Positions 1 through 16,526 of a DNA stretch of 64,000 nucleotides are shown one piece after another. Under the pieces are notes generated by a model that searched no databases, was not told the origin of the DNA, and saw only the letters and a program-made list of their open reading frames with translations. The stretch covers positions 1-64,000 of IMG/VR virus record IMGVR_UViG_3300029908_000004. One strand, given 5' to 3'. A program made the position numbers and the translations under genes. How positions within the stretch are numbered: the first letter of the stretch is position 1; every line of letters starts with the position of its first letter.

Positions 1-841
1 CGACGTGTTCGTATAATGGTAGTTTCAACTTAGCTAACTTGTCCCGCATAGCTTTTACTTTATCTGGGTATTTCTGTAGTCTATCTTGACCTACATCCAT
101 ACTCTCAGAGTCATCAAACCACCCCTCTAAAGCGGGGTCGAAAGCCGTCCATTCATGGCGAGCCCCAGCCCCAACCATACTTAATGTGGCTTTGGAAGAT
201 AACGAAGAGGTACCTATTACAACTAAGTCTCTTCCTTCACTACCCGTGGATAGAACCATGTATCTTTCACCGGGTTTGAACTTAACGTTCGTGCTACCGG
301 GTACTTTATATTCTTTATTACAACGTAGAACTGTACCCTCACAACATCTATCAAACAGAGGTGTGTCACCAGTTACCGGTGGCGGTGGGAAAGGTGTACT
401 TTCTATCTCTTGACGTCTAGCTTCTTTCTTAGCCCAGTTAGTTAGTGTGGGAGAAATATACACTTTTATCCCATAGCTTTCGAATATCTTTGCGTAGGGG
501 TGGTCCTTAAAATCATTCTTTAGATATAACCACAACTCCATATTTAGTTGGCTGTTGTCACAGCACCCAGAAACACCATAGAAAGCAGGATTACGCATTT
601 CCATAACGTGTTTACGCTCTTCTAACTCTCTCCATATATCAACAGCTTCGAGATCATTCGGCTGTATAACTAAATATCTTCCACCCTTATGGAACGTTAC
701 TGATGGGTGTTCTACAACTAATTTTGGAGCTGGTTTAGATGATTTTACTTTCTTCTTTGGTGGCTCCGGTGTTGGATCATTTACTACACTTACGGTCTCT
801 ACCAATCCTACGACTGGAACTTGGATCTTCGTTCTCCTCAA
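1..841 (-). CDS. Large phage protein, N-terminal part (runs off the window start); function unknown
   Basis: Manual translation: an open frame from TTG at 841 to position 1 with no stop (MRRTKIQVPVVGLVETV...KLAKLKLPLYEHV). Absent from the ORF track. Confidence 0.7.
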   Translation of the reverse strand, partial: MRRTKIQVPVVGLVETVSVVNDPTPEPPKKKVKSSKPAPKLVVEHPSVTFHKGGRYLVIQPNDLEAVDIWRELEERKHVMEMRNPAFYGVSGCCDNSQLNMELWLYLKNDFKDHPYAKIFESYGIKVYISPTLTNWAKKEARRQEIESTPFPPPPVTGDTPLFDRCCEGTVLRCNKEYKVPGSTNVKFKPGERYMVLSTGSEGRDLVVIGTSSLSSKATLSMVGAGARHEWTAFDPALEGWFDDSESMDVGQDRLQKYPDKVKAMRDKLAKLKLPLYEHV

Positions 842-846
842 CTTGA

Positions 847-978
847 CTATCCCCCTAAATTAGGGAAAAGCTGTATCTTAAATGGTAGCTTTCCCTTAGT
901 GGCTTGGTAATATAATAAAGCCACATCCATTATTACTGCAACCATTACTACTATAATGGTCACGAAAAACATTCGCAT
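847..978 (-). CDS. Small membrane protein (43 aa)
   Basis: Manual translation MRMFFVTIIVVMVAVIMDVALLYYQATKGKLPFKIQLFPNLGG; one hydrophobic helix. Confidence 0.5.
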   Translation of the reverse strand: MRMFFVTIIVVMVAVIMDVALLYYQATKGKLPFKIQLFPNLGG

Positions 979-987
979 TAACTTCCT

Positions 988-1281
988 TTACATCTTATCG
1001 GGCTTGAACACTATACGTTTCTTCCCTTTGAATTGTGTTACAATCTTTCCTAATCTCCACAATCTCCTTGATGTAGGAGCTTTACGGATGGAAAGAGTCC
1101 CGAGGTTAGGGATTATTATCTCTTCACCTCGGGATATTGCTGCCTGTAAGACAGAAAATACTATGGATACAATAGCCTTAGATTTCCTGATGGGCAAACC
1201 CATCGTTGATGATACTAGCTTTGCTAGTTCTTTCTTGGTTATAGTTCTAGGCTTTTGCCCAAATGTATTCAATTGCCACAT
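988..1281 (-). CDS. HU/IHF-like DNA-binding protein
   Basis: TKKELAKLVS...SKAIVSIVFSVLQAAISRGEEIIIPNLGTLSIRK...KRIVFKP matches the HU/IHF pattern. Confidence 0.8.
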   Translation of the reverse strand: MWQLNTFGQKPRTITKKELAKLVSSTMGLPIRKSKAIVSIVFSVLQAAISRGEEIIIPNLGTLSIRKAPTSRRLWRLGKIVTQFKGKKRIVFKPDKM

Positions 1282-2236
1282 CTACTTTATTCACAATGTC
1301 TGGAATGATATCATCGTAGGACTTTTGCATGTGTCTGCATAGTATCTCTTCGATGGGGCCTTTTACAAAGCCTCTACCATCCTTTATTCTAGCTTCTATC
1401 TCTTTATGTGTTAATATACTACCAGTCTCATCGTATCTTTCTGATAAGTCTTCTCTGGCAGACATAACTATTTCGTCATGGACGACAAATAGGATTCTAG
1501 CATCTTCAGGACCGTAGTTTTTCTCTATCAATTCGTTGTAAACGCCAGCCATTGCTGGTTTTAGCATGTCAACGTTTCCAGCTTGAATAGGTTGATTACC
1601 AGCCCATCTACGTATTTGTGCTAGTAAACCATCTGCGTCTCTATCTTCAGCGGAAGGTAAAGTATAATGTCTAATCCTACCACGAGGAGATGTAGAATAC
1701 CCATAACGTACAGCATTGTTACCTGTTTCTTCTAACCATCTCTTCAAGACATGGAATTTAGCAAAGAAAGCATTTATGAAGTCTTGCGCTGCCTCTGGTG
1801 TCATCCCAGTCATTGCTGCAATTCTAGCAGCACCGGCACCATAAGTAGTGCCAAAGGTTACAGTCTTAATGTTGTTACGGATAGTAGATAATTCTTGGTG
1901 CCTAGGATGTAACGGATCCTTACGAGCTATATTAATAGTGTCATAATCAAAATTTAGTGAGGCACCAAATACTTCTACTGAATTATAACAATGTATGTCT
2001 TTACCTGAGTTAATAGCGGCTATTAGAACTGGATCACGGCTTAGGTGAGCCATAAGCTTCACTTCTATCTGTGCATAATCAGCAGATAGAATCCTATGTC
2101 CTTCTTGTGCTCTAATAGCCTCTCTAATATCAGGAACTCTGGTATAGATATCTGGTGAAACTTTACCATTTTCTTCTATGCGCGCATAGTATTCTTTAAG
2201 GCCGATTTTACCTATTGGCTTATAATTATATTCCAA
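1247..2236 (-). CDS. polA: Family A DNA polymerase, C-terminal (palm/fingers) subunit
   Basis: Motif A ILSADYAQIEVKLMAHLS, motif B RNNIKTVTFGTTYG, motif C ILFVVHDEIV. Confidence 0.93.
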   Translation of the reverse strand: MEYNYKPIGKIGLKEYYARIEENGKVSPDIYTRVPDIREAIRAQEGHRILSADYAQIEVKLMAHLSRDPVLIAAINSGKDIHCYNSVEVFGASLNFDYDTINIARKDPLHPRHQELSTIRNNIKTVTFGTTYGAGAARIAAMTGMTPEAAQDFINAFFAKFHVLKRWLEETGNNAVRYGYSTSPRGRIRHYTLPSAEDRDADGLLAQIRRWAGNQPIQAGNVDMLKPAMAGVYNELIEKNYGPEDARILFVVHDEIVMSAREDLSERYDETGSILTHKEIEARIKDGRGFVKGPIEEILCRHMQKSYDDIIPDIVNKVDVAIEYIWAKA

Positions 2237-2819
2237 TTGCTCCTTCTATTACTAGTTTTACTTTATCTAATGTGTCCTCTATCATTTTTCTGTATTCTAC
2301 AACAGATTTAGTATGCCCAAAACGAGAACATAATTTCATCCATATGGCTACACGAAGTACATCGTCTGGGGACCCGTTACTTTTTATTGTATTAGCTTTA
2401 TGAGATATAACCCAAGAGTTATTTTGTGTGTACCCCTCAATCGGAATGAATTTATCTATCGTTGCCGATTCCGGTACAGGTTTTTCTGTACCAATCATAA
2501 AGCTTGTTCCAAATACGGGGCATGTCTGATTTAGATACTCGTTAACAAAGTCCAATGTTATATCTATTGGAACGTTCTCCAGTCCTGAACGACGTTTAGC
2601 ATTGTTTAGTAAATATCTGGGTTGTTCAGCTTTCCTAGACTTTCTGTAATGTTCTTGTTTCTTAGCCCTCAATTCTATTGCGTTGTTGTGGTGGTGATCC
2701 CTACAGTTACAACGTCTAAGAGTTTGATGGTGTGTTAACTTCCCAGACCTATATTCCTGTAGTAAATCAGGATATTTTTCTAGTCTGGATAATAACTTGG
2801 CTTCTGATAATTTTTGCAT
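2226..2819 (-). mobile_element. Free-standing HNH-type homing endonuclease gene (HEG1)
   Basis: CPVFG...ATIDKFIPIEGYTQNNSWVISHKANTIK beta-beta-alpha motif; insertion flanked by a 7-nt direct repeat AGAGTTC (2134-2140 and 2861-2867, minus strand). Confidence 0.8.
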
Positions 2820-2837
2820 TGGTAATTCTCGTATACC

Positions 2838-3002
2838 TTACATAGTATAGGAGAATTGGTGAACTCTCCAAACAATTTTCTTGTATTGGGTGTTAACAAC
2901 CTCTAGGCCAGTGTCATCCTTGACCACTGGCCTTAAATCATAGTAATATTCTTTACCGTCTTTGATGCCGAGTGGTTGACGTTCGGCTACTATACTACCC
3001 AT
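2838..3002 (-). pseudogene. Displaced original 5' end of the polymerase C-subunit gene (54 aa)
   Basis: MGSIVAERQPLGIKDGKEYYY...KKIVWRV aligns with the current N-terminus MEYNYKPIGKIGLKEYY...PDIYTRV and breaks at the AGAGTTC repeat. Confidence 0.7.
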
Positions 3003-3004
3003 TA

Positions 3005-3454
3005 CTATTCTTCACCCTTTGCTCCATTTGGATCTTCTGTGTCATCCTCGTACAAATCACTAGAGTTAGTGTTATCGTCATTGTTCTCAGCGAGTTGACG
3101 ACCAAGGAGTTCTTGCTGTGCCCTCATGTTATTACGTAGTAACCTCTCAGTAAATCCTTCGAAAGTAATAACACCATTGTTATCTTTGTATGGGATCCAA
3201 ACACGATCACCAGCAATTTGTGTGAAATGAGTAGCTGCAGCCATAAGTAGTTGCAATTCAGCGATTTGTGCGTTGCCCCTACGAATCTGAGCCTGACTAA
3301 CTGCTTTACCAGCTTCACGTTCTGCTGTTACAGCATCAGTCTTTGCTGCTTCTAGATTTAGGAATAGCTGTTCGATTTCCTGTTGTGCCTCTGGTGATAG
3401 TTCATTAATTCTAATCTTTGTGGTTCGAAATGCTTTGCGGAATTGGTTTCCCAT
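3005..3454 (-). CDS. Hypothetical coiled-coil protein between the polymerase halves
   Basis: 149-aa ORF with SD (AGGAG), an alanine/glutamate-rich helix and an acidic tail. Confidence 0.75.
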   Translation of the reverse strand: MGNQFRKAFRTTKIRINELSPEAQQEIEQLFLNLEAAKTDAVTAEREAGKAVSQAQIRRGNAQIAELQLLMAAATHFTQIAGDRVWIPYKDNNGVITFEGFTERLLRNNMRAQQELLGRQLAENNDDNTNSSDLYEDDTEDPNGAKGEE

Positions 3455-3466
3455 AGCTATATTCTC

Positions 3467-3556
3467 CTATTGATACTTCATCCAAACATCTTTGAATTGC
3501 TTTTTAACAAATGCTAACTCTTTTGGATCTTTCACTACTGCGTAGCGCTCTTCCGG
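3467..3556 (-). pseudogene. Displaced original 3' end of the polymerase N-subunit gene
   Basis: PEERYAVVKDPKELAFVKKQFKDVWMKYQ* parallels the current end PTERFCEVKGEELSEIQQLFSEKIKQFTS*; it has no start codon. Confidence 0.7.
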
Positions 3557-3597
3557 ACTATCTGAGTTTCAATTTCGCTTGTTTTCGCTGGATCTAC

Positions 3598-3608
3598 TAT
3601 ACTATATA
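3598..3608 (+). promoter_or_regulatory. TATACTATATA promoter motif of HEG2
   Basis: Lies just upstream of SD AAGGAG and ATG 3626; the same motif precedes all six endonuclease genes. Confidence 0.6.
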
Positions 3609-3625
3609 ATAGCAAGGAGATCAAT

Positions 3626-4261
3626 ATGCGAGGTACTAAGTTAAAGTTAGTTAAAAATCAGGTATTTGGTTACCTAGAAATAATAGAGGAAGACGGATTC
3701 AAACTTCAACCTAGCAACTCTAAGAAGAACTTGAAGGGGATCCGCAAATACCTCTGGAAATGTAGATGTACAGCGCCTAGTATAAAAACCGGAATAGTTT
3801 GTAACAAAATAGTAACTATAGCCGGCTCTGATATGGTTTCTGGACGTGTTATAAGTTGTGGTTGTTGTAGGGGCCATTTCGGTATGGGTGGTTTAGGAAA
3901 AGAGTATTCAAAACGCCGTAACGGAATAGGTAATCCTGCTTTTAGGACTTTGTTACGTAGATATAAGGGTGGTGCTAAAGATCGTAGTATAAAATGGACA
4001 TTAACTGATGAAGAATTCCTGGGATTAACGAGTTCTCCTTGCTTTTATACAGGGAGGTTACCAAGTTCCGAATCCAGATCTGAGAAGTCCAATTTAGGAT
4101 TATATTTATACAATGGCATAGATAGACTAGATAGTTCTAAGGGATATACAAAGGATAATTGCGTACCTTGTTGTAAACAGGCAAACTTCGCTAAACATAC
4201 TCAATCTTTTGATGAATTCATTGAGATGTGTAATATGGTTTCAGACCGTTTTAGGAAGTAA
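3626..4261 (+). mobile_element. Antisense HNH homing endonuclease gene (HEG2)
   Basis: N-terminal WKCRC..C/SCGC element plus CFYTG...NGIDRLDSSKGYTKDNCVPCCKQANFAK; own SD and promoter. Confidence 0.88.
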
Positions 4262-5570
4262 ACTGTTTTATCTTTTCAGAGAAGAGTTGTTGTATCTCAC
4301 TTAGCTCTTCTCCCTTCACCTCACAAAACCTTTCCGTTGGGCGAGGCATTTGCTGGAAGTCACTAGAGTATCTACCTGTAGCGATTGTTCCCTTCTTAGA
4401 TAAACTACCGTCTCCAGAACCTAGTTGATTAAATTCTGGGTGTAACCGTCCAGTCTTTGTATTGACCCTCTTTAGTAGGTTTTCACCGTAAGTCGAAGTA
4501 ACTTTCATTACGTTAGAATACTCTGCTAATGCTTTAGCAATAGGGTGATCAATAGATTCCAATGTTTCTCTCTGGACATTTTCTATATCAAAGTCTAGAT
4601 TTCTCAACGCTGCCAATTTCTGAGCAGGGGAATTAAGATCAAATACATTCTTAACTTCTGGTATTAGGGATAATTCTACTTTACCTTTGCTTTTTAGTTC
4701 CTTGTCATAAGAATTGAGTATTTCTATTTCTAATTCTTTCTGCCTACTCTCCCAATAGGAGAGAGCTAGTTTAAGAGTGTCCCTATCTAAATTAACTCCA
4801 TTGAGTTCCATGGAAGCAGTCACAGGTAGTACGTTAAACTCATCTTGTGCTACTACTTCTAGTTTCCAATGTTTCAGTTGTTCTTTTTGTTCATTCATTA
4901 CTGGAAATAGTAGAATAATATCTCTGGCAGCGTAGTAAGCCATATCTTTGGATATCTTTTCTCCACGTTCTTTGAAGTGGATAAAGTCAGCTCTAACTTC
5001 CTTTGATATCATCCTATAAGGCTTATATCTACGTGCTAGATCTGCTAATCCTACCTTTATTCCATTCAAACCAGAAGTTAGTAGTTGTTCGGCTAGCATA
5101 GTATCATACATATTATTTATATGTATTTTATACTTAACAAATAAGTATTTGAAGTCATATACTAGGTTTTGACCTAGATGTAGAAGTGTTTTATTTTCTA
5201 GGACATCGGCGAGGTAAGGCACTAGTCCGGGTTGTATTAGAAATACTTTACTTTCATTACCTAATTGCAACAGTAATAATTTAGAACCTTCCCGCCAAGG
5301 ATCTAAACCAGATTTCTTATCTTCACCAGTAGTTTCTGTGTCTAACCCAATCGTACCCATTTCAATTAGGGTATCAACTATCCAAGACAGTTGTTTACAT
5401 TCTCTACCTTCATCAATAATTATCCATTGAGAACGAGGGACGGCTTCTGTCTCGAAGCCGTCCTCTAACCATTCTTTATAGCCAACAACATAATAGTTGA
5501 TTGGTATTTTCTCTTCTATTTGATGGCTTACTATCTCTATAGATTTGCCCCGTATTGGAGCTCTACTCAT
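4251..5570 (-). CDS. polA: Family A DNA polymerase, N-terminal subunit (3'-5' exonuclease plus thumb)
   Basis: ExoI GLDTETTG, ExoII GQNLVYDFKYL, ExoIII YAARD, and RLHPEFNQ...TGRYSS. Confidence 0.92.
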   Translation of the reverse strand: MSRAPIRGKSIEIVSHQIEEKIPINYYVVGYKEWLEDGFETEAVPRSQWIIIDEGRECKQLSWIVDTLIEMGTIGLDTETTGEDKKSGLDPWREGSKLLLLQLGNESKVFLIQPGLVPYLADVLENKTLLHLGQNLVYDFKYLFVKYKIHINNMYDTMLAEQLLTSGLNGIKVGLADLARRYKPYRMISKEVRADFIHFKERGEKISKDMAYYAARDIILLFPVMNEQKEQLKHWKLEVVAQDEFNVLPVTASMELNGVNLDRDTLKLALSYWESRQKELEIEILNSYDKELKSKGKVELSLIPEVKNVFDLNSPAQKLAALRNLDFDIENVQRETLESIDHPIAKALAEYSNVMKVTSTYGENLLKRVNTKTGRLHPEFNQLGSGDGSLSKKGTIATGRYSSDFQQMPRPTERFCEVKGEELSEIQQLFSEKIKQFTS

Positions 5571-5583
5571 TACTTAACCTCAT

Positions 5584-6159
5584 TCACTTTTCATTGAAAG
5601 GTCTATAAAATAGGGAGCTATACACAACCTGTGTTGCCATATCTCTCAATAACTCTAGATTACCTGATACCACACCAATAACTAAATCAAATGGGTACCC
5701 GTCTAATTGTGTTTCAGATGCGTGATTAGGATCTCTTGATGGGTCAATGAATTGTGTCCCATCTGGATTAAGTCTAATGATATCAATTACCAATCCACCT
5801 AATGATTTAATCCAGTTCGCTTCATTAATAAATCTTACATCCGTTATCACGGCGATTCCGGGTTCTTCTTGTAGTATTCTAGCGTTTACCTTACTTATCC
5901 AGCAATCTGGGTCTCTTGCTCTTTCTACTTCAGTACCTATGTACTGAAGCATCTTCGGATAATTATAGATTGGATCTGGTTTAGTATCCAATTCAATAAA
6001 TGGATATTTTATTACTAGACTCTCGTGGTTATCCCTACAAAAGATCTTCAATTCCTTCGCAAATGAATAAGTTCTTGCGTATGAATACTCTTCTAATATA
6101 GACTTGGCAAACGTGTCTTTACCTTGTCTAGCTTTGTGTCCTAGACCTATGATTAGCAT
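5584..6159 (-). CDS. Deoxynucleoside monophosphate kinase
   Basis: IIGLGHKARQGKDT P-loop, LQYIGTE, VITDVRFINEA, HASE. Confidence 0.9.
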   Translation of the reverse strand: MLIIGLGHKARQGKDTFAKSILEEYSYARTYSFAKELKIFCRDNHESLVIKYPFIELDTKPDPIYNYPKMLQYIGTEVERARDPDCWISKVNARILQEEPGIAVITDVRFINEANWIKSLGGLVIDIIRLNPDGTQFIDPSRDPNHASETQLDGYPFDLVIGVVSGNLELLRDMATQVVYSSLFYRPFNEK

Positions 6160-6647
6160 TATTTATGTTTGGTTTGGTTATCAAGAACCTTTTGTATATT
6201 TGCTGGTGAGTATGTGTCTGGCGGTTTAATAACCTTACCGTCTTCCCTCTTGTGGATAGTTCCATCTGACCAGACTTTACTCATATTAGAGCGGTTCACT
6301 TCTTCGAATACTTCTTGTCCTTCTACCCCAGCTGCACTGAAGGCTCCATAAGTAACAACTAATTGGTCTGCACAAGCGTCAACGTACTCAACAAAGTCGG
6401 GTTCGAAATTGTCTGTATCAATATAAACATCCTGTGAACCAATTCTTAGGACTTGCCCAGCTCTATCATTAATGAATAAATTACATCCACAAGCTTTTAC
6501 AAATTCCATTGCCTCTTCATATACTAATCTTGCTCTGAGACGCAATGTATCTTTATCAGGCAATTCTGGGCTACTCTTAACCTCTTGGCCAAAGAGTTCC
6601 ATCATCTTATTAACATCGCCTTGTGGATTATATGGTTTTTCTGACAT
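6159..6647 (-). CDS. MazG/PRA-PH-like NTP pyrophosphohydrolase
   Basis: LRARLVYEEAMEF...DACADQLVVTYG...EVNRSNMSK...REDGKVIKP. Confidence 0.85.
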   Translation of the reverse strand: MSEKPYNPQGDVNKMMELFGQEVKSSPELPDKDTLRLRARLVYEEAMEFVKACGCNLFINDRAGQVLRIGSQDVYIDTDNFEPDFVEYVDACADQLVVTYGAFSAAGVEGQEVFEEVNRSNMSKVWSDGTIHKREDGKVIKPPDTYSPANIQKVLDNQTKHK

Positions 6648-7068
6648 CCTTTAATTCCTCTTTCCAAGCTTCAGTTGCTATCCATCCTCTGGATATCCCA
6701 TCTACTGCTATGTAGGCTTCTATTACACTAGACAGCCTCTCTCCCAGTGGACGATCACTATCTTCTATTATACTAGCATGCTCATCTAATCTCAAACCAT
6801 ATTCACGAAGAATATTTTGTAGGACTGGCATTACAATACCCACTCCTAATTTTTCCAAAGACCTTACAACTCTTCCAGCATCTGTTAGATACAGTTTTTT
6901 CCCTTTAGGTTTTTGATATGCATAAACTATGATTTGTTCGTTGTCTTTTGTTTTAAAAGGTAGTTGTATTTGATAGGTAAGGACGAGATCTTTGACTTCA
7001 CTTATGATAATGTGCTTGGCGTTGTATAGTGGCAAAGCTTCTTTTAATATTTTTGCTTCACGTCTCAT
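6628..7068 (-). CDS. DUF1828-like protein
   Basis: QLPFKTKDNEQIIVY...YLTDAGRVV pattern. Confidence 0.55.
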   Translation of the reverse strand: MRREAKILKEALPLYNAKHIIISEVKDLVLTYQIQLPFKTKDNEQIIVYAYQKPKGKKLYLTDAGRVVRSLEKLGVGIVMPVLQNILREYGLRLDEHASIIEDSDRPLGERLSSVIEAYIAVDGISRGWIATEAWKEELKDVRKTI

Positions 7069-7114
7069 TAGTTTCTTTGCACCAGTTGGCTATAGTTTAT
7101 CTAAACAAATGGAA

Positions 7115-7138
7115 GCGCTAGGTATTTAATTCTAGCGC
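7115..7138 (-). terminator. Probable intrinsic terminator hairpin
   Basis: GCGCTAG/CTAGCGC stem followed by a T-rich tract on the minus strand. Confidence 0.45.
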
Positions 7139-7151
7139 CTCCCGTAATAGT

Positions 7152-7418
7152 TTACATACGTTTTGTTTCATTATCCCGCTCCAATGGCGGCTTCACACCT
7201 TCAATATCCAAACTTACAGTAGTGGATGTGTTTAGAGCTTCATACAGGTCTTCAGATAGTGAATCTGATATAACTAACCTAAGGGCTACTTCCATAAACC
7301 TTGGCGCTTTTTCTATCTTAATCAATTGGATACGAGCTGGTACCTTCATATCTTGAAATAGAAAACCACCATTGTTATAAACAGCGTTTACATTGACGTG
7401 TACTTTCCCATTTGCCAC
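7152..7418 (-). CDS. Hypothetical protein
   Basis: 88-aa ORF, GTG start with SD. Confidence 0.55.
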   Translation of the reverse strand: MANGKVHVNVNAVYNNGGFLFQDMKVPARIQLIKIEKAPRFMEVALRLVISDSLSEDLYEALNTSTTVSLDIEGVKPPLERDNETKRM

Positions 7419-7509
7419 GTGTCACCTCTGTATGCGTTTAAATTGAGGATTACTACTTTTCTACAGTCTTAATGTATTTGAGCATAGAACAATCACTCCT
7501 AAAAAATGA

Positions 7510-10032
7510 TTACTTACATTTAGAGTAACCACACAACACACTACATTCTGTGCAGCCTGATATAAATCTTAGCTGTGCCCCACAATCAGGGCATTTAGGT
7601 GTATGTTTTGTTATATTTTCATCTTTGATAGCTGCTAGCTTTGTCTCAATAACAAATGGTATATTGGAAATCTTTGAGGCGAAGTATGGTGCTGCCTTCT
7701 CAAAGATGACTTCATCTATTAGCTGAACGGCAGAAGTAAAACACTTACCGTTATACCATAAAGCAGACTGCCCACCAACTCTTCTTAGTTGTTGGCGTAT
7801 CTCTTTGGAAGACACATTGGATCTAAGCAATAAACTTATTAATCTACCTGCTAATTCTATCCATTCATTACCAGCGTTCTCACGTAGAAATACTTCTATT
7901 ACTCTACCCTCAATCTGATGATTAACGGTTACGTATAGCTTACCATCTCTACCATCTGGGATAACATAAGTTCCCCCATCTAGGAAATCTGGACGCTCAA
8001 TAACTTCTTTCTCTTGTATCGGTTTTAGTACTGTTTTAAGAGATGTGGGCTTCTTCTCTTCTCTTATTAGTACACCTTCACGACATCCGTCTCTGTATAC
8101 AGTTATTCCTTTTAGCTTAAGCTTGAATGCTAGGTTATATACATAAGCAACGTCCTCTACTGTGGACGTAGTTGGCATATTAACTGTTTTGGATATAGCG
8201 TTATCACAATACTTCTGAAATGCAGCTTGCATTCTAACGTGTTGTTCAGGGGTTACTTGACTAGCATCTACAAAATAACTAGGAAGTTTATCTTCTTTGT
8301 GTTCAGCTAACCAAGCTTCTGCCCTTGAATCATAGTACTCTCTTACACCAATTGTATCCTGTCTAGTATATTTAAAAGCAAATATAGGCTCTATACCAGA
8401 AGAACATTCATCTATAAGAGAAATAGTCCCTGTTGGGGCTATAACAGTAACGTGACAGTTTCTAACTCCATGCTTTTTGTACAACGAGTATAAGGTTTGG
8501 TTTTGAGTAATATAACGATGAGCAGGATGACAATTTATATCCTTAGATAATTGTCCCATCTTATTATCAAAGAATTCTACATTATTCTCTAGCTCTGGAA
8601 AGGGTCCAAACTCCTTGGAAAGCATAGTAGATTCAATCCAAGCGTAGTATTGTATCCACTGTCCTATCCTTTCACCCACTTCATATGATTCATCACTACC
8701 ATAAGCGATATGTAAATCTAATAGTAAATCTGCTACTCCCATTACACCTAAACCAATAGGTCTAGAAGCTTTGGTAGTGTCAGTTATCTCTTGGATAGGA
8801 TATTCGTTTTTCTCTATAACCGCATCTAGGAATCTAGCGGCCTTACGGGCTGTAATTGCTAATCTCTTCCAGTCTACATAGTTATACCAAGCATCTGATT
8901 TATCAGATGCTTTAGCTGTAAAGAATTTACTTACATTAATAGAACCAAGATTGCAAGAATTGTGATCTACTTGATAGTATTCCCCACACGGATTGGAATT
9001 ATGTATAGGTCCTAAAGACTTGACTGGGTTATCATCGTTGACAATATCATCAAACATAATTCCGGGTTCGGCAGAGGACCATGCTGATTCTAATATCCTC
9101 TGCCATAACAGCTTAGCTCTAACATATTTGATACCATCCTTCTCGACAACGATGTTAGCGTCATTGCGAGGATCCAGAACTGGACCTCTCCAGGGCTCAT
9201 AGCGTACTTGTTTTGCCCGTGGACCATTCTCCGGGTCATCTACAATAGCTCGGCGCAACATAAAGAGTCCATCTTCTTCAAGTACTTTCATGAACTCATT
9301 AGTTACTTTAACAGAGATATTGAAACCAGAGAATGGGGAATGCCAAGTATCTTGCTGAACACTGTTTCCATGGTCGGTGACGTCAAGCCAACCGACATCC
9401 TGCGCTACCTGGCGAGCTTGCTCTAGGCTCAGACCGTACTGGTTTAGCAGGGTGTTCAACAACCAAGGCCCAGTCTTGACTTTGCAATCTATAAAAGCCA
9501 AGATTTCAGGGTGCCAGACAGCTAACATCCACATCATAGCGATGCGCCTTCTGCCTCCCTGAACAATCGCTTCGCTCATAGCCTGAAATGGACCCATGAA
9601 GCTTATAACACCTGAAGCGATTCCACCTGAATTAGTTAACGCACCATATGGTCGGATTTGAGACCCGTCCATGCCAATACCACCACCAGTCTTCCCAATA
9701 ATGGCACCGTCTTGAATTGCTTTGAAGATACCTGGTATATCATCTGGTACATGGAGGATATAACAAGCAGATAAAGACTTCTTACTTACATAAGGATTCC
9801 CAGCATTAAACCATGTTGGGGAATTAGGAGAAAACTCCTGATTATACATTAGTCTGAAGAAAGATTCTTCTAGACCCTGTGGTTCCCCTGATGGATAAGC
9901 GCTGGAAATATCTTTTGCTACACGACGACAACAATGCTCCCATTCCGTCTCGATTTTATTGCCTTGTGGATCACGGAGATAGTAGCGTTCACTTAACACC
10001 TTTTCGGTGTTAGGTTTTAAAACTCTTCCCAT
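7510..10032 (-). CDS. nrdJ: Class II (adenosylcobalamin-dependent) ribonucleotide reductase with C-terminal TSCPD/zinc-ribbon domain
   Basis: PNSPTWFNAG, SACYIL, SNPCGE, CNLGSIN, RPIGLGVMG, IAPTGTIS, DNAISKTVN, LKGITVYRDG, terminal CPDCG...CSVLCGYSKC; no NrdB nearby. Confidence 0.92.
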   Translation of the reverse strand: MGRVLKPNTEKVLSERYYLRDPQGNKIETEWEHCCRRVAKDISSAYPSGEPQGLEESFFRLMYNQEFSPNSPTWFNAGNPYVSKKSLSACYILHVPDDIPGIFKAIQDGAIIGKTGGGIGMDGSQIRPYGALTNSGGIASGVISFMGPFQAMSEAIVQGGRRRIAMMWMLAVWHPEILAFIDCKVKTGPWLLNTLLNQYGLSLEQARQVAQDVGWLDVTDHGNSVQQDTWHSPFSGFNISVKVTNEFMKVLEEDGLFMLRRAIVDDPENGPRAKQVRYEPWRGPVLDPRNDANIVVEKDGIKYVRAKLLWQRILESAWSSAEPGIMFDDIVNDDNPVKSLGPIHNSNPCGEYYQVDHNSCNLGSINVSKFFTAKASDKSDAWYNYVDWKRLAITARKAARFLDAVIEKNEYPIQEITDTTKASRPIGLGVMGVADLLLDLHIAYGSDESYEVGERIGQWIQYYAWIESTMLSKEFGPFPELENNVEFFDNKMGQLSKDINCHPAHRYITQNQTLYSLYKKHGVRNCHVTVIAPTGTISLIDECSSGIEPIFAFKYTRQDTIGVREYYDSRAEAWLAEHKEDKLPSYFVDASQVTPEQHVRMQAAFQKYCDNAISKTVNMPTTSTVEDVAYVYNLAFKLKLKGITVYRDGCREGVLIREEKKPTSLKTVLKPIQEKEVIERPDFLDGGTYVIPDGRDGKLYVTVNHQIEGRVIEVFLRENAGNEWIELAGRLISLLLRSNVSSKEIRQQLRRVGGQSALWYNGKCFTSAVQLIDEVIFEKAAPYFASKISNIPFVIETKLAAIKDENITKHTPKCPDCGAQLRFISGCTECSVLCGYSKCK

Positions 10033-10282: not shown

Positions 10283-11335
10283 TTACACTTTGGTTCCGGC
10301 ATTCTCGGAGTCTTCCTTTTTAGCAGCAACTATCATAGAACATATTTTGTAGATACTAGCTGCTGTGGAAGACAACGTTAAGCCGTCTTCCCATGATTGA
10401 TATAAAGATAGTTCATGGATAGCATTAGCGCATCTCATAGCGCGTTTACCATCTGATTGGAGTAGTAACCATTTAAATCTATTAGCTAATACAGAACGAA
10501 TAGCTTTACCATCCCCTGTATTAGCTTTGTTTAGGATACCACGAGTCTTTATCCAATCACCAGTTACAACTGCTTGCCATAGTTCAGAGACATTAACACC
10601 AATAAGATCAACAGGTTGAGCAGCTTCTTCTGGACTAGCACCAGCTAAACACTTCTCCATAGCCATCACAGCTAACCCCGGGCTAGTTATACCATTAGCT
10701 TTGAGAGCTATTATTAGCTTATCAGAGACTTTGTCTGGTAACATAGGTTGATTAGCTGCTGCCAAATGTAGATTAACACAGGTTACCAATTCTGCTAGTC
10801 CGTCTTCATTGACCCCCGGCAGAACAAAAGTTAGACATCTCCGCTTTATCGCTGGTAATAACTTGGCAGGATTCGTGGTACAAAGTATCCATATAGTATT
10901 ACTGGATTCCTCTTCAAATGACTTCAACAACACAGTTTGAGCTGGTTCAGTCGTTTTATGAACTTCATCTAGTATAATTATCCTGTGATCACCTTCTAAG
11001 GGGTATCTCCCAGCTAAGCTAACCAATGCCCTAGCATCATCTATACCATTGTTATCTGGTACATTTTGTTCGGTGATACTAAATGAGTTCTCATCATATT
11101 TTTTTATACATTCTATACAAGGCTCACCAAACTCTTTTACATGTTTACATTGTAAAGATACAGCTATGATCCTAGCTATAGTGGTTTTCCCAGAGCCCGG
11201 CTCTCCAATGAAAAGCCAGACTTTGGGGATTCTACCATTGGCTATTTGATTACGAATTTGATCTGTTATACCACGCGTGCCAACCATCATGTCTAAACGT
11301 TTAGGTCGACACGTTATACTAAGATTTTGGTCCAC
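10283..11335 (-). CDS. dnaX: DnaX (gamma/tau)-like clamp loader AAA+ subunit
   Basis: GEPGSGKTT Walker A, C..PCIECI zinc motif, IIILDEVH Walker B, CTTNPAKLLPAIKRRC. Confidence 0.88.
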   Translation of the reverse strand: MDQNLSITCRPKRLDMMVGTRGITDQIRNQIANGRIPKVWLFIGEPGSGKTTIARIIAVSLQCKHVKEFGEPCIECIKKYDENSFSITEQNVPDNNGIDDARALVSLAGRYPLEGDHRIIILDEVHKTTEPAQTVLLKSFEEESSNTIWILCTTNPAKLLPAIKRRCLTFVLPGVNEDGLAELVTCVNLHLAAANQPMLPDKVSDKLIIALKANGITSPGLAVMAMEKCLAGASPEEAAQPVDLIGVNVSELWQAVVTGDWIKTRGILNKANTGDGKAIRSVLANRFKWLLLQSDGKRAMRCANAIHELSLYQSWEDGLTLSSTAASIYKICSMIVAAKKEDSENAGTKV

Positions 11336-12973: not shown

Positions 12974-13870
12974 TTATTTGTCTAACCTCAAACGATTAAA
13001 TACAGGAAATCTCATGGATTTATCTTCTGTTATTTCCTGAAACTTTACTTCAAATATTTGATCGATTAGCTTGCCTTCTTTATACATTTTCCAGAAGGTT
13101 TCCCTCTGGGTGTCATCAAAACCAGTGCCACATTCGGAGATAACGTGGTAAGATTTGTCATTCCACTCTACATCCCCTTCAAGTAGAACCTTGCCTAACC
13201 TTCCTACATGCTTACCATTACCCTCATAGGCTTCAGTAACAAATAAATCAGCGTCTGTCCATGGCTTAATCTTTAACCAATATGGGGAGCGTCTGCCTAG
13301 TTCATAAGGTCCGTCAGGATCCTTAACCATTCCACCTTCATAGCCCTTCTCTAACAAGTGAACGTACTCTTCTTGTATCTGAGCATAAGATGTAACTATT
13401 TGGTGTTCAACAAGTATCACACCATTAGGGTTAGCAGAACTCAAAGCATTTTCTAGCTTAGCATATCTATCTCGTAGTGGGGCATCTGTCCCACACAACT
13501 GGCCATGTACTAGGGGTACCATATCAAAGATATTAAACCTAATGTTAGCAGCGTCAGGATGTGGTTCTCTCTGTCTCTTCAGAATAGACATGGATTTATT
13601 CCAATTCTCACTGAAGAATTCACCATCGAGGAAATGATTAGCAAACTGTTTGCGAGTAAGTTGTTCTAGTATATGATCAATGTTCCAGAATGGCTTACCA
13701 TTACGGCTAAATCCAACTGCCTTACCTTTATTATCTACGATAACACCACGTAAACCATCTAGTTTTGGTTCCAACCACCATGGCTTGGTAATTTTAAATC
13801 TCTTTGGATTCAGTGTCTTAGCTAGCTGTGGATTTATAAGGAAAGAATGTTCTGGAGTTGTATCGCTCAT
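12974..13870 (-). CDS. lig: ATP-dependent DNA ligase
   Basis: EPKLDGLR adenylation motif, LDGEF, FDMV, EGGMVK, WLKIKP, ECGTGF, RFPVFNRLRLDK. Confidence 0.95.
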   Translation of the reverse strand: MSDTTPEHSFLINPQLAKTLNPKRFKITKPWWLEPKLDGLRGVIVDNKGKAVGFSRNGKPFWNIDHILEQLTRKQFANHFLDGEFFSENWNKSMSILKRQREPHPDAANIRFNIFDMVPLVHGQLCGTDAPLRDRYAKLENALSSANPNGVILVEHQIVTSYAQIQEEYVHLLEKGYEGGMVKDPDGPYELGRRSPYWLKIKPWTDADLFVTEAYEGNGKHVGRLGKVLLEGDVEWNDKSYHVISECGTGFDDTQRETFWKMYKEGKLIDQIFEVKFQEITEDKSMRFPVFNRLRLDK

Positions 13871-13881
13871 TTTATAACCTC

Positions 13882-14532
13882 TTAGAAAGAAATATCAATT
13901 TCTGTTATTATAGGTCCAGTACGTAGAAAGGATTCTGGAGAAAAGTCTTCTACTGTCCTAAATTCACCAATAGCTAGGTATAATGAAGAACATAGAGAAA
14001 ACACATCTACTTTTGATCCGTATATAGATATTGGGTACCCTCCACCACGAGCATTGTTATGGAAGTCAATTCTACTCATGATAGGCTTATCTAGAACCGG
14101 GATATCAGGAGAAACTAATATTCTTTTACATATAAAGTAGCTACGTCTACCTAGACCACACCTATAACATTGTATACCACATTCCTTAAGCTCAACAGAT
14201 GGTAGGTATTGTCGTTTTCTATACAAAGGCCAATTAGTTGGGGTCTCACACTTTATTTCTAACTGCATTGCGTTATACATATCATTTACAAGGTCACGGA
14301 GAGCCCAATCATTACCTTCAAAGTATACAGATGTCTCTGGTACTGACTCTTTCGAATGAAAACCTATTTGATAAAATATAGATTCGTATCTATCTTTTAT
14401 TTTTATGTGAGGCTCAACTTCATTAATAGATATGCTAGCTACTTTAAATCTATCTCTCCAATTTGTGGAGTAGTTATTTCTTTGCACAATTACATTTAGA
14501 CCAGACATATCAAGCTTATCCATTTGTTTCAC
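13882..14532 (-). CDS. Hypothetical protein
   Basis: 216-aa ORF in the operon. Confidence 0.65.
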   Translation of the reverse strand: MKQMDKLDMSGLNVIVQRNNYSTNWRDRFKVASISINEVEPHIKIKDRYESIFYQIGFHSKESVPETSVYFEGNDWALRDLVNDMYNAMQLEIKCETPTNWPLYRKRQYLPSVELKECGIQCYRCGLGRRSYFICKRILVSPDIPVLDKPIMSRIDFHNNARGGGYPISIYGSKVDVFSLCSSLYLAIGEFRTVEDFSPESFLRTGPIITEIDISF

Positions 14533-15211
14533 TAATCTCTTTCATTAAATCTAGTATCTTATTTGAATCTAAGTATTCTCTCTTAAATAGGAGTAAGTTT
14601 TGTTCCACTCTACCAGTCTTCTCTGGAGAAGGCTCTCTAAGTAGATAAGCTGGGTGTACCATGCAGAATACAGCGATGTTTGGTAAAATAGAAGTAGTAA
14701 ACCACCGTCCTTCATGAGTGTTTCCTTTCGGTTCCCCTCCAAGTATGGTTTTAGCCGCTACCCAGCCTAAAGTTATAACCACTTCTAAGTTTGGCATAGC
14801 AGTAAGCACACGAAGGGTTCTACTACCAAAGCAGGCTTTTATTTCATCTTTATCTGGAGGTTTCTGTGAAAGTCTGCCATCTACCCTTTGTTTTCCCGGT
14901 TGACATTGAACTACATTTGTTAATAAACATCTGTTCTGGTCTAGATTTATGAATCTTGCCCACTTATCCCACTCTCTACCTGATACACCTACTAACGGCT
15001 GCCCACGTTCTGTTTCTGTATCGCCCGGCGCTTCGCCTATGACCGCTACATTTCCATCTGGGTTACCACGTAGAATTAATCCCCTATTGTCTGGGTGTAA
15101 ATAAGATAACCTACATTCATTACAGGTTTTGGATAGTTCTTTGATTACTACCCTAGGGTCCTCTTTTATATTCGATTTTGTATCTGTTACAAGGAATGTT
15201 AATTGCCCCAC
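14516..15211 (-). CDS. Uracil-DNA glycosylase, family 4
   Basis: CNECRL, VIGEAPG..E...G.PLVG.SG, LTNVVQC, KAC, MVHPAYLLR. Confidence 0.9.
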   Translation of the reverse strand: MGQLTFLVTDTKSNIKEDPRVVIKELSKTCNECRLSYLHPDNRGLILRGNPDGNVAVIGEAPGDTETERGQPLVGVSGREWDKWARFINLDQNRCLLTNVVQCQPGKQRVDGRLSQKPPDKDEIKACFGSRTLRVLTAMPNLEVVITLGWVAAKTILGGEPKGNTHEGRWFTTSILPNIAVFCMVHPAYLLREPSPEKTGRVEQNLLLFKREYLDSNKILDLMKEISETNG

Positions 15212-15365: not shown

Positions 15366-16526
15366 CTATGGTTTTATCCCCATAACAACATATTTAGTTG
15401 TTATTTCATCCTCACCATCAGTAATAACTAATGGCTGTAACGGACCAGTAATCCCAACTTTCAGAGTTAGAGACTTAGATACACTAACTATATTAGACAA
15501 GTAGTCTATACCAATAGCTATCTTTATTGGTTCCTCTGTGTTAACATCCGCTGGTAACATTACTGGTAGAACATCATAAGAGTCACCTACCCCAGAGTCA
15601 TTCTTGGTAGTTATATATAATTCCGCTTTCTTTAACTCTATGTCTACGTATCCCTTGGAGTTCCGAAAGGTATTTGCCCTATCTAAGGCAGCTTTAAAAG
15701 CCATCCTATCGATAGTGAAAGTGATATTCCCCTTCTTCTCAAACACACTAGTTAGATTAGGATATTTACCAGACAATAAGATAGTGCCATACATAGTGTC
15801 ACCACATTTAAACACTATTTTATTGTTCCCATACCTAATTATGTTTATTACTTCTGTGGATCTCTTACCTAATAGTTTACCTAAAGGGGCTAGGGAAGCT
15901 TGAGGTAACTTAATTCCTTCTAATTCCCCCGGTTGTGCTTTAGATGCTTTAACGATTACACTTACAGCTATACAGTTATCTGTAGCTTGACCTTCATACC
16001 CAGTAGATGTACTTACTACATTCAAACAACTAAATATGTTACTTTGTCCAGTGTTATCTGTTGGTATACAGAACTGAGCACGACGAATGAACTCTGCCAT
16101 GTCTTTACCATTAACCTTGAAGATAGAAGGTTCCGTAAATGGTAACTTCTTTAGCTGATTTTCAACAGCAATAACGTTTATATCTGCAGTAACATGGAAT
16201 TTAGCCTTACCAAAGGCTACCTTTATTTTCTTGCCTTCTGATTCTAACGTAAGAGCAATCTCGTCGTCTCTTGGTCTGCCTTGCAAGCCACCTATTAATT
16301 GATCTGGGTTAAGAAGAACTTTACCCTCTTCCTCAATGATAGCTGGTATTTTAGTTAGGGTTTCTGAAAGTAGATTTGTAGAATAGATATATAAAAACTG
16401 CTGATCTGCTGATTTCTTCACCGCTTGTATATACACACAAGCAGTGGAGGTAGCACGTTTATCCGCAGTAGCAAAAACCTGGTTGACAGCGTCAACCAGG
16501 CTTCCAATGTTTACTTTGAGCCTCAT
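15366..16526 (-). CDS. dnaN: DNA polymerase III beta sliding clamp
   Basis: 386 aa with three-domain clamp features: QATDNCIA, LSGKYPNL, IGIDYL, C-terminal YVVMGIKP. Confidence 0.85.
   Translation of the reverse strand: MRLKVNIGSLVDAVNQVFATADKRATSTACVYIQAVKKSADQQFLYIYSTNLLSETLTKIPAIIEEEGKVLLNPDQLIGGLQGRPRDDEIALTLESEGKKIKVAFGKAKFHVTADINVIAVENQLKKLPFTEPSIFKVNGKDMAEFIRRAQFCIPTDNTGQSNIFSCLNVVSTSTGYEGQATDNCIAVSVIVKASKAQPGELEGIKLPQASLAPLGKLLGKRSTEVINIIRYGNNKIVFKCGDTMYGTILLSGKYPNLTSVFEKKGNITFTIDRMAFKAALDRANTFRNSKGYVDIELKKAELYITTKNDSGVGDSYDVLPVMLPADVNTEEPIKIAIGIDYLSNIVSVSKSLTLKVGITGPLQPLVITDGEDEITTKYVVMGIKP

What the first reader, a model, noticed from the sequence alone, without database searches (positions are those of the whole stretch)
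1247..5570. Family A DNA polymerase split into two genes about 2 kb apart
Seen: the exonuclease/thumb part ends shortly after TGRYSSDFQQMPR with a roughly 30-aa tail. The palm/finger part begins with a roughly 34-aa leader before PDIREAIR...ADYAQIE. Two HEGs, two displaced fragments and a coiled-coil ORF lie in between. Both versions of the tail and both versions of the leader preserve similar residues, which suggests they act as association modules. Inference: a naturally heterodimeric Pol A working with the phage DnaN and DnaX.
Basis: partly seen in the sequence, partly recalled or inferred. Interest (0 to 1): 0.68.

Follow-up and report, generated by a model that had tools for sequence, protein, structure and literature searches.

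The report
Three-gene split DNA polymerase invaded by endonucleases
A 215-kb uncultured phage encodes its only DNA polymerase as two separate genes with a conserved small gene between them, an arrangement inherited from a large phage clade, and two selfish endonuclease genes later moved in, each bringing a replacement gene end.

Summary
On the minus strand, PolA-N (exonuclease plus thumb, 5570..4251) and PolA-C (palm and fingers, 2236..1247) lie 2,014 bp apart. Between them are two HNH-type endonuclease genes, two gene-end remnants and a 149-aa ORF.

The endonucleases did not cause the split. More than 100 related protein clusters from metagenomes encode stand-alone C-parts. Every HEG-free relative I could read carries a tight N / ~150-aa ORF ("M") / C cassette. 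M is under purifying selection and was found only between the two halves.

The tail and leader are the two halves of a clade-specific insert of about 70-85 aa. Two relatives have the insert contiguous in an unsplit protein, and these appear to be secondary re-fusions that lack M.

In this phage each endonuclease gene arrived with a foreign replacement tail or leader. The native ends remain as remnants on either side of M.

No intron or intein was detected, and the phage encodes no other DNA polymerase that I could find. The two-chain enzyme is therefore very probably functional, but association, activity and the role of M are untested. Split phage polymerases are already known, so I rate this a new variant of a known kind.

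The parts
4251..5570 (-). PolA-N gene, 439 aa: 3'-5' exonuclease plus thumb. The core runs to QQMPR (5570..4341). The imported 29-aa tail v1 plus stop is 4340..4251.
   Evidence: Pfam PF01612 and PF00476 positions 5-124. Exo motifs DTET at 77, NLVYD at 135 and YAARD at 213 fall on invariant columns of alignment A2. Tail v1 scores best against distant lineages and poorly against the two closest relatives.
3626..4261 (+). HEG1: free-standing HNH/EndoVII-type endonuclease gene, 211 aa, on the opposite strand. Its 3' end overlaps the PolA-N stop by 11 nt.
   Evidence: PHROG 1035, 3322 and 3118, E 5e-17 to 1e-13. Distant relatives occur in unrelated GenBank phages. Absent from all related N-M-C loci. 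Single copy in this genome.
3467..3559 (-). Remnant of the native PolA-N tail (tail v2): 30 codons plus stop. There is no start codon and an in-frame stop lies just upstream.
   Evidence: Frame read. hhalign against N profile positions 409-433, E 2.3e-6. Its best matches are the two closest whole-protein relatives, P0157 and P0158.
3005..3454 (-). M ORF, 149 aa: the conserved middle gene of the N-M-C cassette. It has a basic N-terminus, a 54-residue helix, a beta hairpin, a second helix and a disordered acidic tail.
   Evidence: 36 clusters in the word search and 63 representatives in the full profile search, all stand-alone small proteins. Always found between N and C. dN/dS about 0.09-0.14. 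AF2 model with pLDDT 80. No Pfam, PHROG, NCBIfam or fold match.
2838..3002 (-). 54-aa ORF: the native 5' end of PolA-C (leader v2; homologous part 3002..2862). It is cut off just before the PDIREAI codons and runs 7 junction codons to a stop.
   Evidence: Aligns to the first ~47 residues of relatives' C-parts. hhalign E 4e-10. Its start abuts the M stop, as the C-part start does in HEG-free relatives.
2226..2819 (-). HEG2: free-standing HNH/EndoVII-type endonuclease gene, 197 aa. It overlaps the PolA-C start by 11 nt.
   Evidence: PHROG 3322, E 7e-23. Relatives in GenBank phages are annotated as HNH endonuclease. Absent from relatives. Single copy in this genome.
1247..2236 (-). PolA-C gene, 329 aa: palm and fingers. 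The imported 34-aa leader v1 is 2236..2135 and the core starts at PDIREAI (2134). The start codon is TTG, preceded by AAGGAG.
   Evidence: Pfam PF00476 positions 140-351, E 1e-43. Motif A D53, motif B R120/K124/Y132/G133 and motif C H253-D254-E255 are invariant columns of A3. TTG is the only in-frame ATG/GTG/TTG between the upstream stop and motif A. Leader v1 matches only distant lineages.

Best explanation
This uncultured 215-kb phage belongs to a large clade whose family A DNA polymerase is encoded by a three-gene cassette:
- PolA-N (exonuclease plus thumb),
- a conserved ~150-aa protein M,
- PolA-C (palm plus fingers).

The break lies inside a clade-specific insert of about 70-85 aa. This insert sits in the loop between the TGR...QQ(I/M)P motif and the strand that leads to motif A, corresponding to about Taq residues 586-592. 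The N-part tail and the C-part leader are the two halves of that insert. I infer that they re-associate and hold the two chains together as one polymerase fold.

Later, two free-standing HNH-type homing endonuclease genes entered this phage exactly at the two boundaries between conserved core and insert: after the QQMPR codons and before the PDIREAI codons. Each came with a foreign replacement end, tail v1 or leader v1, that keeps the polymerase gene complete. The native tail and leader were pushed aside and survive as remnants on either side of M.

Shown: the anatomy, the clade-wide conservation, the native versus foreign origin of the ends, and the lack of any detected intron or intein.

Inferred: association of the chains, activity, homing activity of the endonucleases, and any role of M.
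For: **The split is real and old.**
- Pfam places the two ORFs on complementary parts of PF00476.
- 119 clusters of stand-alone 295-360-aa C-parts share 35-73% identity. The matching 430-477-aa N-parts were also found.
- HEG-free relatives L004, L005/L006, L007, L010, L011 and L017-L022 all show the order N-M-C, mostly with 0-40 nt between genes.

**The enzyme is under selection.**
- Exo I-III and polymerase motifs A, B and C are invariant.
- dN/dS is about 0.1.
- No PolB or Pol III alpha was found in the complete record.

**Tail and leader form one insert.**
- They are contiguous in the unsplit relatives P0217 and P0100. Outgroups have only a few residues at that position.
- On a rooted tree the unsplit forms nest inside the split clade, with split P0107 among their nearest relatives.

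**The ends came from different sources.**
- The tail v2 remnant scores 85 and 64 against the two closest relatives, where tail v1 scores only 41 and 30.
- The leader v2 remnant scores 131 against the closest relative, where leader v1 scores 24.
- Both HEG ORFs hit endonuclease PHROGs. Neither was found in any related locus.

**No sign of splicing.**
- Rfam finds no intron in the window or in the relatives.
- Synonymous sites in M are saturated.

**The arrangement is stable.** The same architecture is present in three assemblies.
Against: - There is no direct evidence that the chains bind or polymerise.
- The AF2 model of the unsplit relative has pLDDT below 50 over residues 381-451, which includes the tail. 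The predicted fold therefore does not show a tail-leader module.
- PolA-C depends on a TTG start only 3 nt after the Shine-Dalgarno core.
- The 54-aa native-leader ORF keeps its ATG and may be translated, with unknown effect.
- No donor phage carrying either endonuclease gene was found, so homing is inferred from anatomy alone.
- The tree is a quick search with SH-aLRT support only. The base of the split clade is unresolved.
Confidence: 0.75

Rival explanations
1. The pieces are rejoined after transcription or translation, by a group I/II intron or by a split or trans-splicing intein, so the working enzyme is a single chain.
For: Introns that carry HNH endonucleases are common in phage PolA genes; this is background knowledge and is also cited in the paper read. 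The unsplit relatives show that a contiguous tail-leader protein is viable.
Against: - No Rfam intron at E<=1 in the window or in five related loci.
- In HEG-free relatives the N stop overlaps or abuts the M start, and the M stop abuts the C start. That leaves no room for a ribozyme core outside M.
- M evolves as a protein, with saturated synonymous sites.
- HEG1 lies on the opposite strand.
- No intein Pfam hit.
- Tail and leader are retained in the mature unsplit homolog, so they are not inteins.
Confidence: 0.05
2. The homing endonuclease insertions themselves broke a formerly intact polymerase gene, the 'genes in pieces' route known from the Aeh1 nrdA/mobE case.
For: Two endonuclease genes sit between the halves. 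That route is documented for other phage genes (PMC2988022).
Against: Every relative that lacks the endonuclease genes is still split and still has M between the halves. The native tail stop and the native leader start survive as remnants next to M, so the split was already there.
Confidence: 0.03
3. The locus is a decaying, non-functional polymerase, and the phage relies on a host polymerase.
For: There are two remnants and two selfish genes in the locus, PolA-C has a non-ATG start, and a degenerate orphan C-part exists in a transposon-rich 668-kb contig (L009).
Against: All catalytic motifs are intact and dN/dS is about 0.1. Identical proteins recur on 6-9 contigs from several samples. The genome carries a full set of replication genes and no other polymerase.
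Confidence: 0.05
4. M is only a passenger gene, possibly the remnant of the element that first split the gene, and has no role in the polymerase.
For: - The unsplit lineage lacks M within 8 kb of the polymerase gene and is presumably viable.
- M has no recognisable domain or fold match.
- The complex prediction gave no support, which counts neither for nor against binding.
Against: - M keeps a constant length and position.
- It is under strong purifying selection (dN/dS 0.09-0.14), diverging about as fast as the polymerase halves.
- Its gene boundaries are tight or overlapping, suggesting co-translation with N and C.
- It was never found outside this context.
Confidence: 0.4

Closest known systems
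Split family A polymerase of OM43 phages MEP401/MEP402 (Zobellviridae; PMC10580990)
   Same: The PolA gene is encoded as an exonuclease-plus-N-terminal ORF, a small ORF of unknown function, and a C-terminal ORF. The break falls between the TGR...Q motif and motif A, and the arrangement is shared by related metagenomic genomes.
   Different: It is an independent event. The MEP401 break lies about one strand further downstream, directly before motif A. Its middle ORF is 77 aa and does not match the M profile. MEP401 is a 43-kb podovirus, and no endonuclease cassettes were described there. Its authors left an intron open as an explanation.
Split family B polymerase gp43 (43A/43B) of T4-related Aeromonas phages 25 and 44RR (reviewed in PMC2988022)
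   Same: A replicative phage polymerase is made from two genes. An endonuclease gene may have invaded a gene that was already split. The two chains co-purify and are active.
   Different: It is a different polymerase family and a different split site. No conserved middle gene or replacement-end cassette has been reported for it.
Aeh1 nrdA split by mobE ('genes in pieces'; cited in PMC2988022)
   Same: A free-standing HNH endonuclease gene lies inside an essential phage gene, and the gene's pieces still form a working enzyme.
   Different: In Aeh1 the endonuclease insertion created the split. Here the split predates the endonucleases.
Terminal gene duplications next to free-standing endonuclease genes in fungal mitochondria (e.g. 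atp6 and cob, PMC6279837)
   Same: A partial extra copy of a gene end lies beside endonuclease ORFs downstream of the intact gene. This matches the pattern of one working end plus one extra partial copy of that end seen here.
   Different: It occurs in organelle genomes with LAGLIDADG or GIY-YIG enzymes. Here both the 3' end of one gene and the 5' end of the next are affected, and the imported ends come from visibly different lineages.

Membership tests
Family A DNA polymerase (Pol I type) | Pfam DNA_pol_A and the 3'-5' exonuclease domain above the curated cut-offs | tested here: met
   N-part: PF01612 63.7 bits and PF00476 39.6 bits. C-part: PF00476 149.8 bits. Solved Taq, Klenow, Bst and PREX polymerases match both profiles.
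Family A DNA polymerase (Pol I type) | Catalytic motifs Exo I-III and polymerase motifs A, B and C are intact | tested here: met
   All are present in the window proteins and invariant across 106 and 115 homologs.
Family A DNA polymerase (Pol I type) | Exonuclease, thumb, palm and fingers on a single polypeptide | tested here: not met
   The chains are separated by stop and start codons here and throughout the clade. Only P0217 and P0100 are single-chain.
Free-standing HNH/EndoVII-type homing endonuclease genes | Sequence membership in an HNH/EndoVII endonuclease family | tested here: met
   PHROG 3322, 1035 and 3118 at E 7e-23 to 1e-5. No Pfam or NCBIfam hit.
Free-standing HNH/EndoVII-type homing endonuclease genes | Present in some related genomes and absent from others at a conserved target in an essential gene | tested here: met
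   Present only in this phage (three assemblies) and absent from all other N-M-C loci. The insertions abut the QQMPR and PDIREAI codons.
Free-standing HNH/EndoVII-type homing endonuclease genes | Site-specific cleavage of the HEG-less allele and gene conversion | not testable with these tools
   This needs enzyme assays or co-infection crosses.
Group I/II intron | A ribozyme core detectable by a covariance model | tested here: not met
   No Rfam match at E<=1 in window 1-8000 or in five related loci.
Intein or split intein | A Hint-domain match, and removal of the segment from the mature protein | tested here: not met
   No intein family among the Pfam hits. Tail and leader persist inside the unsplit homologs.
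'Genes in pieces' created by a homing endonuclease (Aeh1 nrdA type) | Relatives without the endonuclease gene have an unsplit gene | tested here: not met
   All HEG-free relatives examined are split.

The most novel reading that the evidence does not exclude
M is an obligatory third subunit, which would make this a heterotrimeric family A replicase. Its helix and hairpin would clamp or chaperone the tail-leader junction. Its acidic C-terminal tail would recruit other replisome proteins. M would become dispensable only where the two halves re-fused.
Probability: 0.3. Interest if true: 0.7.

Novelty: new variant of a known kind. Interest (0 to 1): 0.55.

Why it matters
- The locus offers a natural, clade-wide case of a Pol I-type enzyme that works as separate chains, alongside natural re-fused relatives. 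This marks a permissive split site (about the Taq 586-592 loop) that could be used for engineering split polymerases.
- It raises a concrete, testable question about a conserved protein of unknown function lying between the two halves.
- It shows clearly how homing endonuclease genes can enter an essential gene without killing it, by carrying a replacement gene end.
- It warns annotators that a 'PolA fragment' in these jumbo phages is not a pseudogene.

Tried and rejected
- **Complex prediction.** Complex prediction with N, C and M (M as partner) scored 0.00, which is no verdict and counts neither for nor against binding. The N-C pair itself was not sent because only one job is allowed.
- **Fold and feature searches for M.** Foldseek against PDB, VIA-align wide and the Atlas feature search returned only generic long-helix matches or weak hits. 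Pfam, PHROG, NCBIfam and tblastn against GenBank phages gave nothing for M.
- **Leader as a duplication.** I tested whether the leader is a duplicate of the preceding HP.F.QLG...TGR motif, as a MAFFT misalignment suggested. hhalign of A3 against A2 found nothing, so I dropped the idea.
- **Folding the unsplit homolog.** Two mixed alignments (A4, A5) were misaligned and not used. The fold from A6 was low-confidence over the tail.
- **Donor search.** Searching viral contigs with either endonuclease gene, or with M, returned only this same phage.
- **Target-site repeats.** No meaningful direct repeats flank the cassettes.
- **Promoters.** The promoter scan was no better than shuffled sequence.
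- **Other inserted ORFs.** Extra ORFs between M and C in L007 and L010 have no PHROG match.
- **Distant M relatives.** Two context look-ups for distant M relatives gave no usable DNA.
Full report
**1. Observation**

The window is the first 64 kb of a 215,291-bp IMG/VR virus record that CheckV rates as complete. All the relevant genes but one lie on the minus strand.

- PolA-N (5570..4251, 439 aa) matches the Pfam 3'-5' exonuclease domain and positions 5-124 of DNA_pol_A.
- PolA-C (2236..1247, 329 aa) matches positions 140-351 of DNA_pol_A.
- The N-part core ends at QQMPR (residue 410), followed by a 29-aa tail.
- The C-part has a 34-aa leader before PDIREAI.

The 2,014 bp between the two genes hold five features:

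- an endonuclease ORF on the plus strand (3626..4261);
- a tail-like remnant (3559..3467);
- a 149-aa ORF (3454..3005);
- a 54-aa ORF (3002..2838);
- a second endonuclease ORF (2819..2226).

The same architecture occurs in two other assemblies: L003 is 99.99% identical over 9.2 kb, and L016 has an identical M ORF and the same spacing.

**2. The split is ancestral and was not made by the endonucleases**

A word search with the C-part found 119 clusters. Almost all are stand-alone proteins of 295-360 aa at 35-73% identity, on contigs up to 226 kb. The N-part search found the matching 430-477-aa partners.

Gene maps and my own profile scans cover eleven distinct related loci: L004, L005/L006, L007, L010, L011 and L017-L022. 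All show the order N, then a ~150-aa ORF, then C. The gaps are usually 0-40 nt or the genes overlap. None contains an endonuclease gene.

No GenBank phage exceeds about 34% identity to either half, so the clade is uncultured.

**3. The middle ORF (M)**

- M has 36 close clusters and 63 representatives in the exhaustive profile search. All are stand-alone proteins of 74-203 aa and none is fused to another domain.
- It was found only between the two polymerase halves.
- Its dN/dS is 0.09-0.14 with saturated synonymous sites, similar to the N-part.
- The AF2 model (pLDDT 80) has a 54-residue helix, a beta hairpin, a second helix and a disordered acidic tail.
- No family or fold match was informative.

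**4. Tail and leader are two halves of one insert**

Two in-clade proteins, P0217 (762 aa) and P0100 (N-terminally truncated), are unsplit. In them the tail runs straight into the leader through a linker of about 10 residues. Outgroup polymerases have only three or four residues at that position.

I built a C-part tree rooted on unsplit outgroups. It used every second cluster of at least 295 aa, a quick IQ-TREE search and SH-aLRT support only.

- The split clade is supported at 99.
- The unsplit pair nests in a five-row group (support 95) together with split members.
- One of those members, P0107, has N, a 162-aa ORF and C in order.

Secondary re-fusion is the most parsimonious reading. The fused locus has no M within 8 kb.

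The split site maps to the loop just before Taq residue ~593.

**5. What the two 'versions' are**

- The tail remnant is most like the tails of the two closest whole-protein relatives (scores 85 and 64). The working tail v1 scores only 41 and 30 against those relatives, and its best matches are distant lineages.
- The 54-aa ORF is a typical near-clade leader (score 131 against the closest relative). It starts right after the M stop, as C-parts do in HEG-free relatives.
- The working leader v1 is short and resembles only distant lineages.

Both endonuclease ORFs hit HNH/EndoVII PHROGs and have distant relatives, some annotated as HNH endonucleases, in unrelated phages.

Each endonuclease gene therefore arrived as a cassette with a foreign replacement end. 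The insertions sit exactly at the two core/insert boundaries, and the native ends were displaced. A comparable pattern, a partial terminal copy beside free-standing endonuclease ORFs, is described in fungal mitochondria (PMC6279837).

**6. Function**

- All exonuclease and polymerase motifs are intact and invariant.
- No PolB or Pol III alpha was detected in the genome. The PF03175 search had no working control.
- A clamp loader, a divergent beta-clamp-like protein, a ligase and a UDG are encoded nearby.
- Rfam finds no intron in the window or in the relatives, and no intein domain is present.
- PolA-C must start at TTG 2236, which is the only in-frame start before motif A.

I conclude that the enzyme works as separate chains. 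Association, activity and the role of M remain inferences.

**7. Limits**

- The fold of the unsplit homolog was unreliable over the tail.

**8. Comparison with known systems and novelty**

- Split phage polymerases are already known. One case is the family B gp43 of phages 25 and 44RR, whose chains co-purify and are active (PMC2988022).
- Another is the family A enzyme of MEP401-type OM43 phages, which also has a small ORF between the halves (PMC10580990).
- The MEP401 break lies at a different position and its middle ORF is unrelated to M, so the two splits are independent.

This locus is a new variant of a known kind. Its distinctive features are the conserved N-M-C cassette, the natural re-fusions and the endonuclease cassettes that carry replacement gene ends.

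Noticed in passing
window 988-1281 (-): An HU-like DNA-binding protein gene (PF00216) lies directly downstream of PolA-C and overlaps its 3' end by about 35 nt. The same neighbour is kept in relatives L005 and L006.
   Followed up: partly
window 7510-10032 (-), especially 9000-9900: An 840-aa ribonucleotide reductase-like ORF contains a segment with GC 0.44-0.49, against about 0.37 around it. The relatives' RNR genes differ in length (644-796 aa). This could reflect an insertion or a strongly conserved core.
   Followed up: no
window 10283-11335, 12974-13870, 14516-15211, 15366-16526 (all -): A replication gene block: a clamp-loader-like AAA+ protein, an ATP-dependent DNA ligase, a UDG-family protein, and a divergent beta-clamp-like protein whose C-terminal domain just passes the Pfam cut-off.
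   Followed up: partly
Contig of P0157 (ENA ERZ1426850, 4,678 bp; no DNA available): In the closest relative the C-part is itself cut after 146 aa and is followed by another 146-aa ORF. This suggests an independent insertion inside PolA-C.
   Followed up: no
L009 8001-8933: An orphan C-part (310 aa) lies among IS and transposase genes on a 668-kb contig. No N-part or M was detected within 8 kb. It may be a decayed integrated copy in a bacterial genome.
   Followed up: partly
L010 10281-14438; L011 1-915; L007 14120-15001: Other selfish elements occur in related phages: a LAGLIDADG domain inside the SNF2-type helicase, an intein in a UDG gene, and an Endonuclease_7 domain fused to DUF1257.
   Followed up: no
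L007 7700-8011; L010 7388-8008; the gene map: The M-C and N-M junctions take up extra ORFs of unknown function in several lineages. In one lineage there are up to seven ORFs, including a ligase-like gene. These junctions seem to be insertion hot spots.
   Followed up: partly
window 2838-3002 (-): The displaced native leader keeps its ATG and its position right after the M stop. A 54-aa peptide that mimics the C-part leader may therefore still be made, and its effect on assembly is unknown.
   Followed up: no
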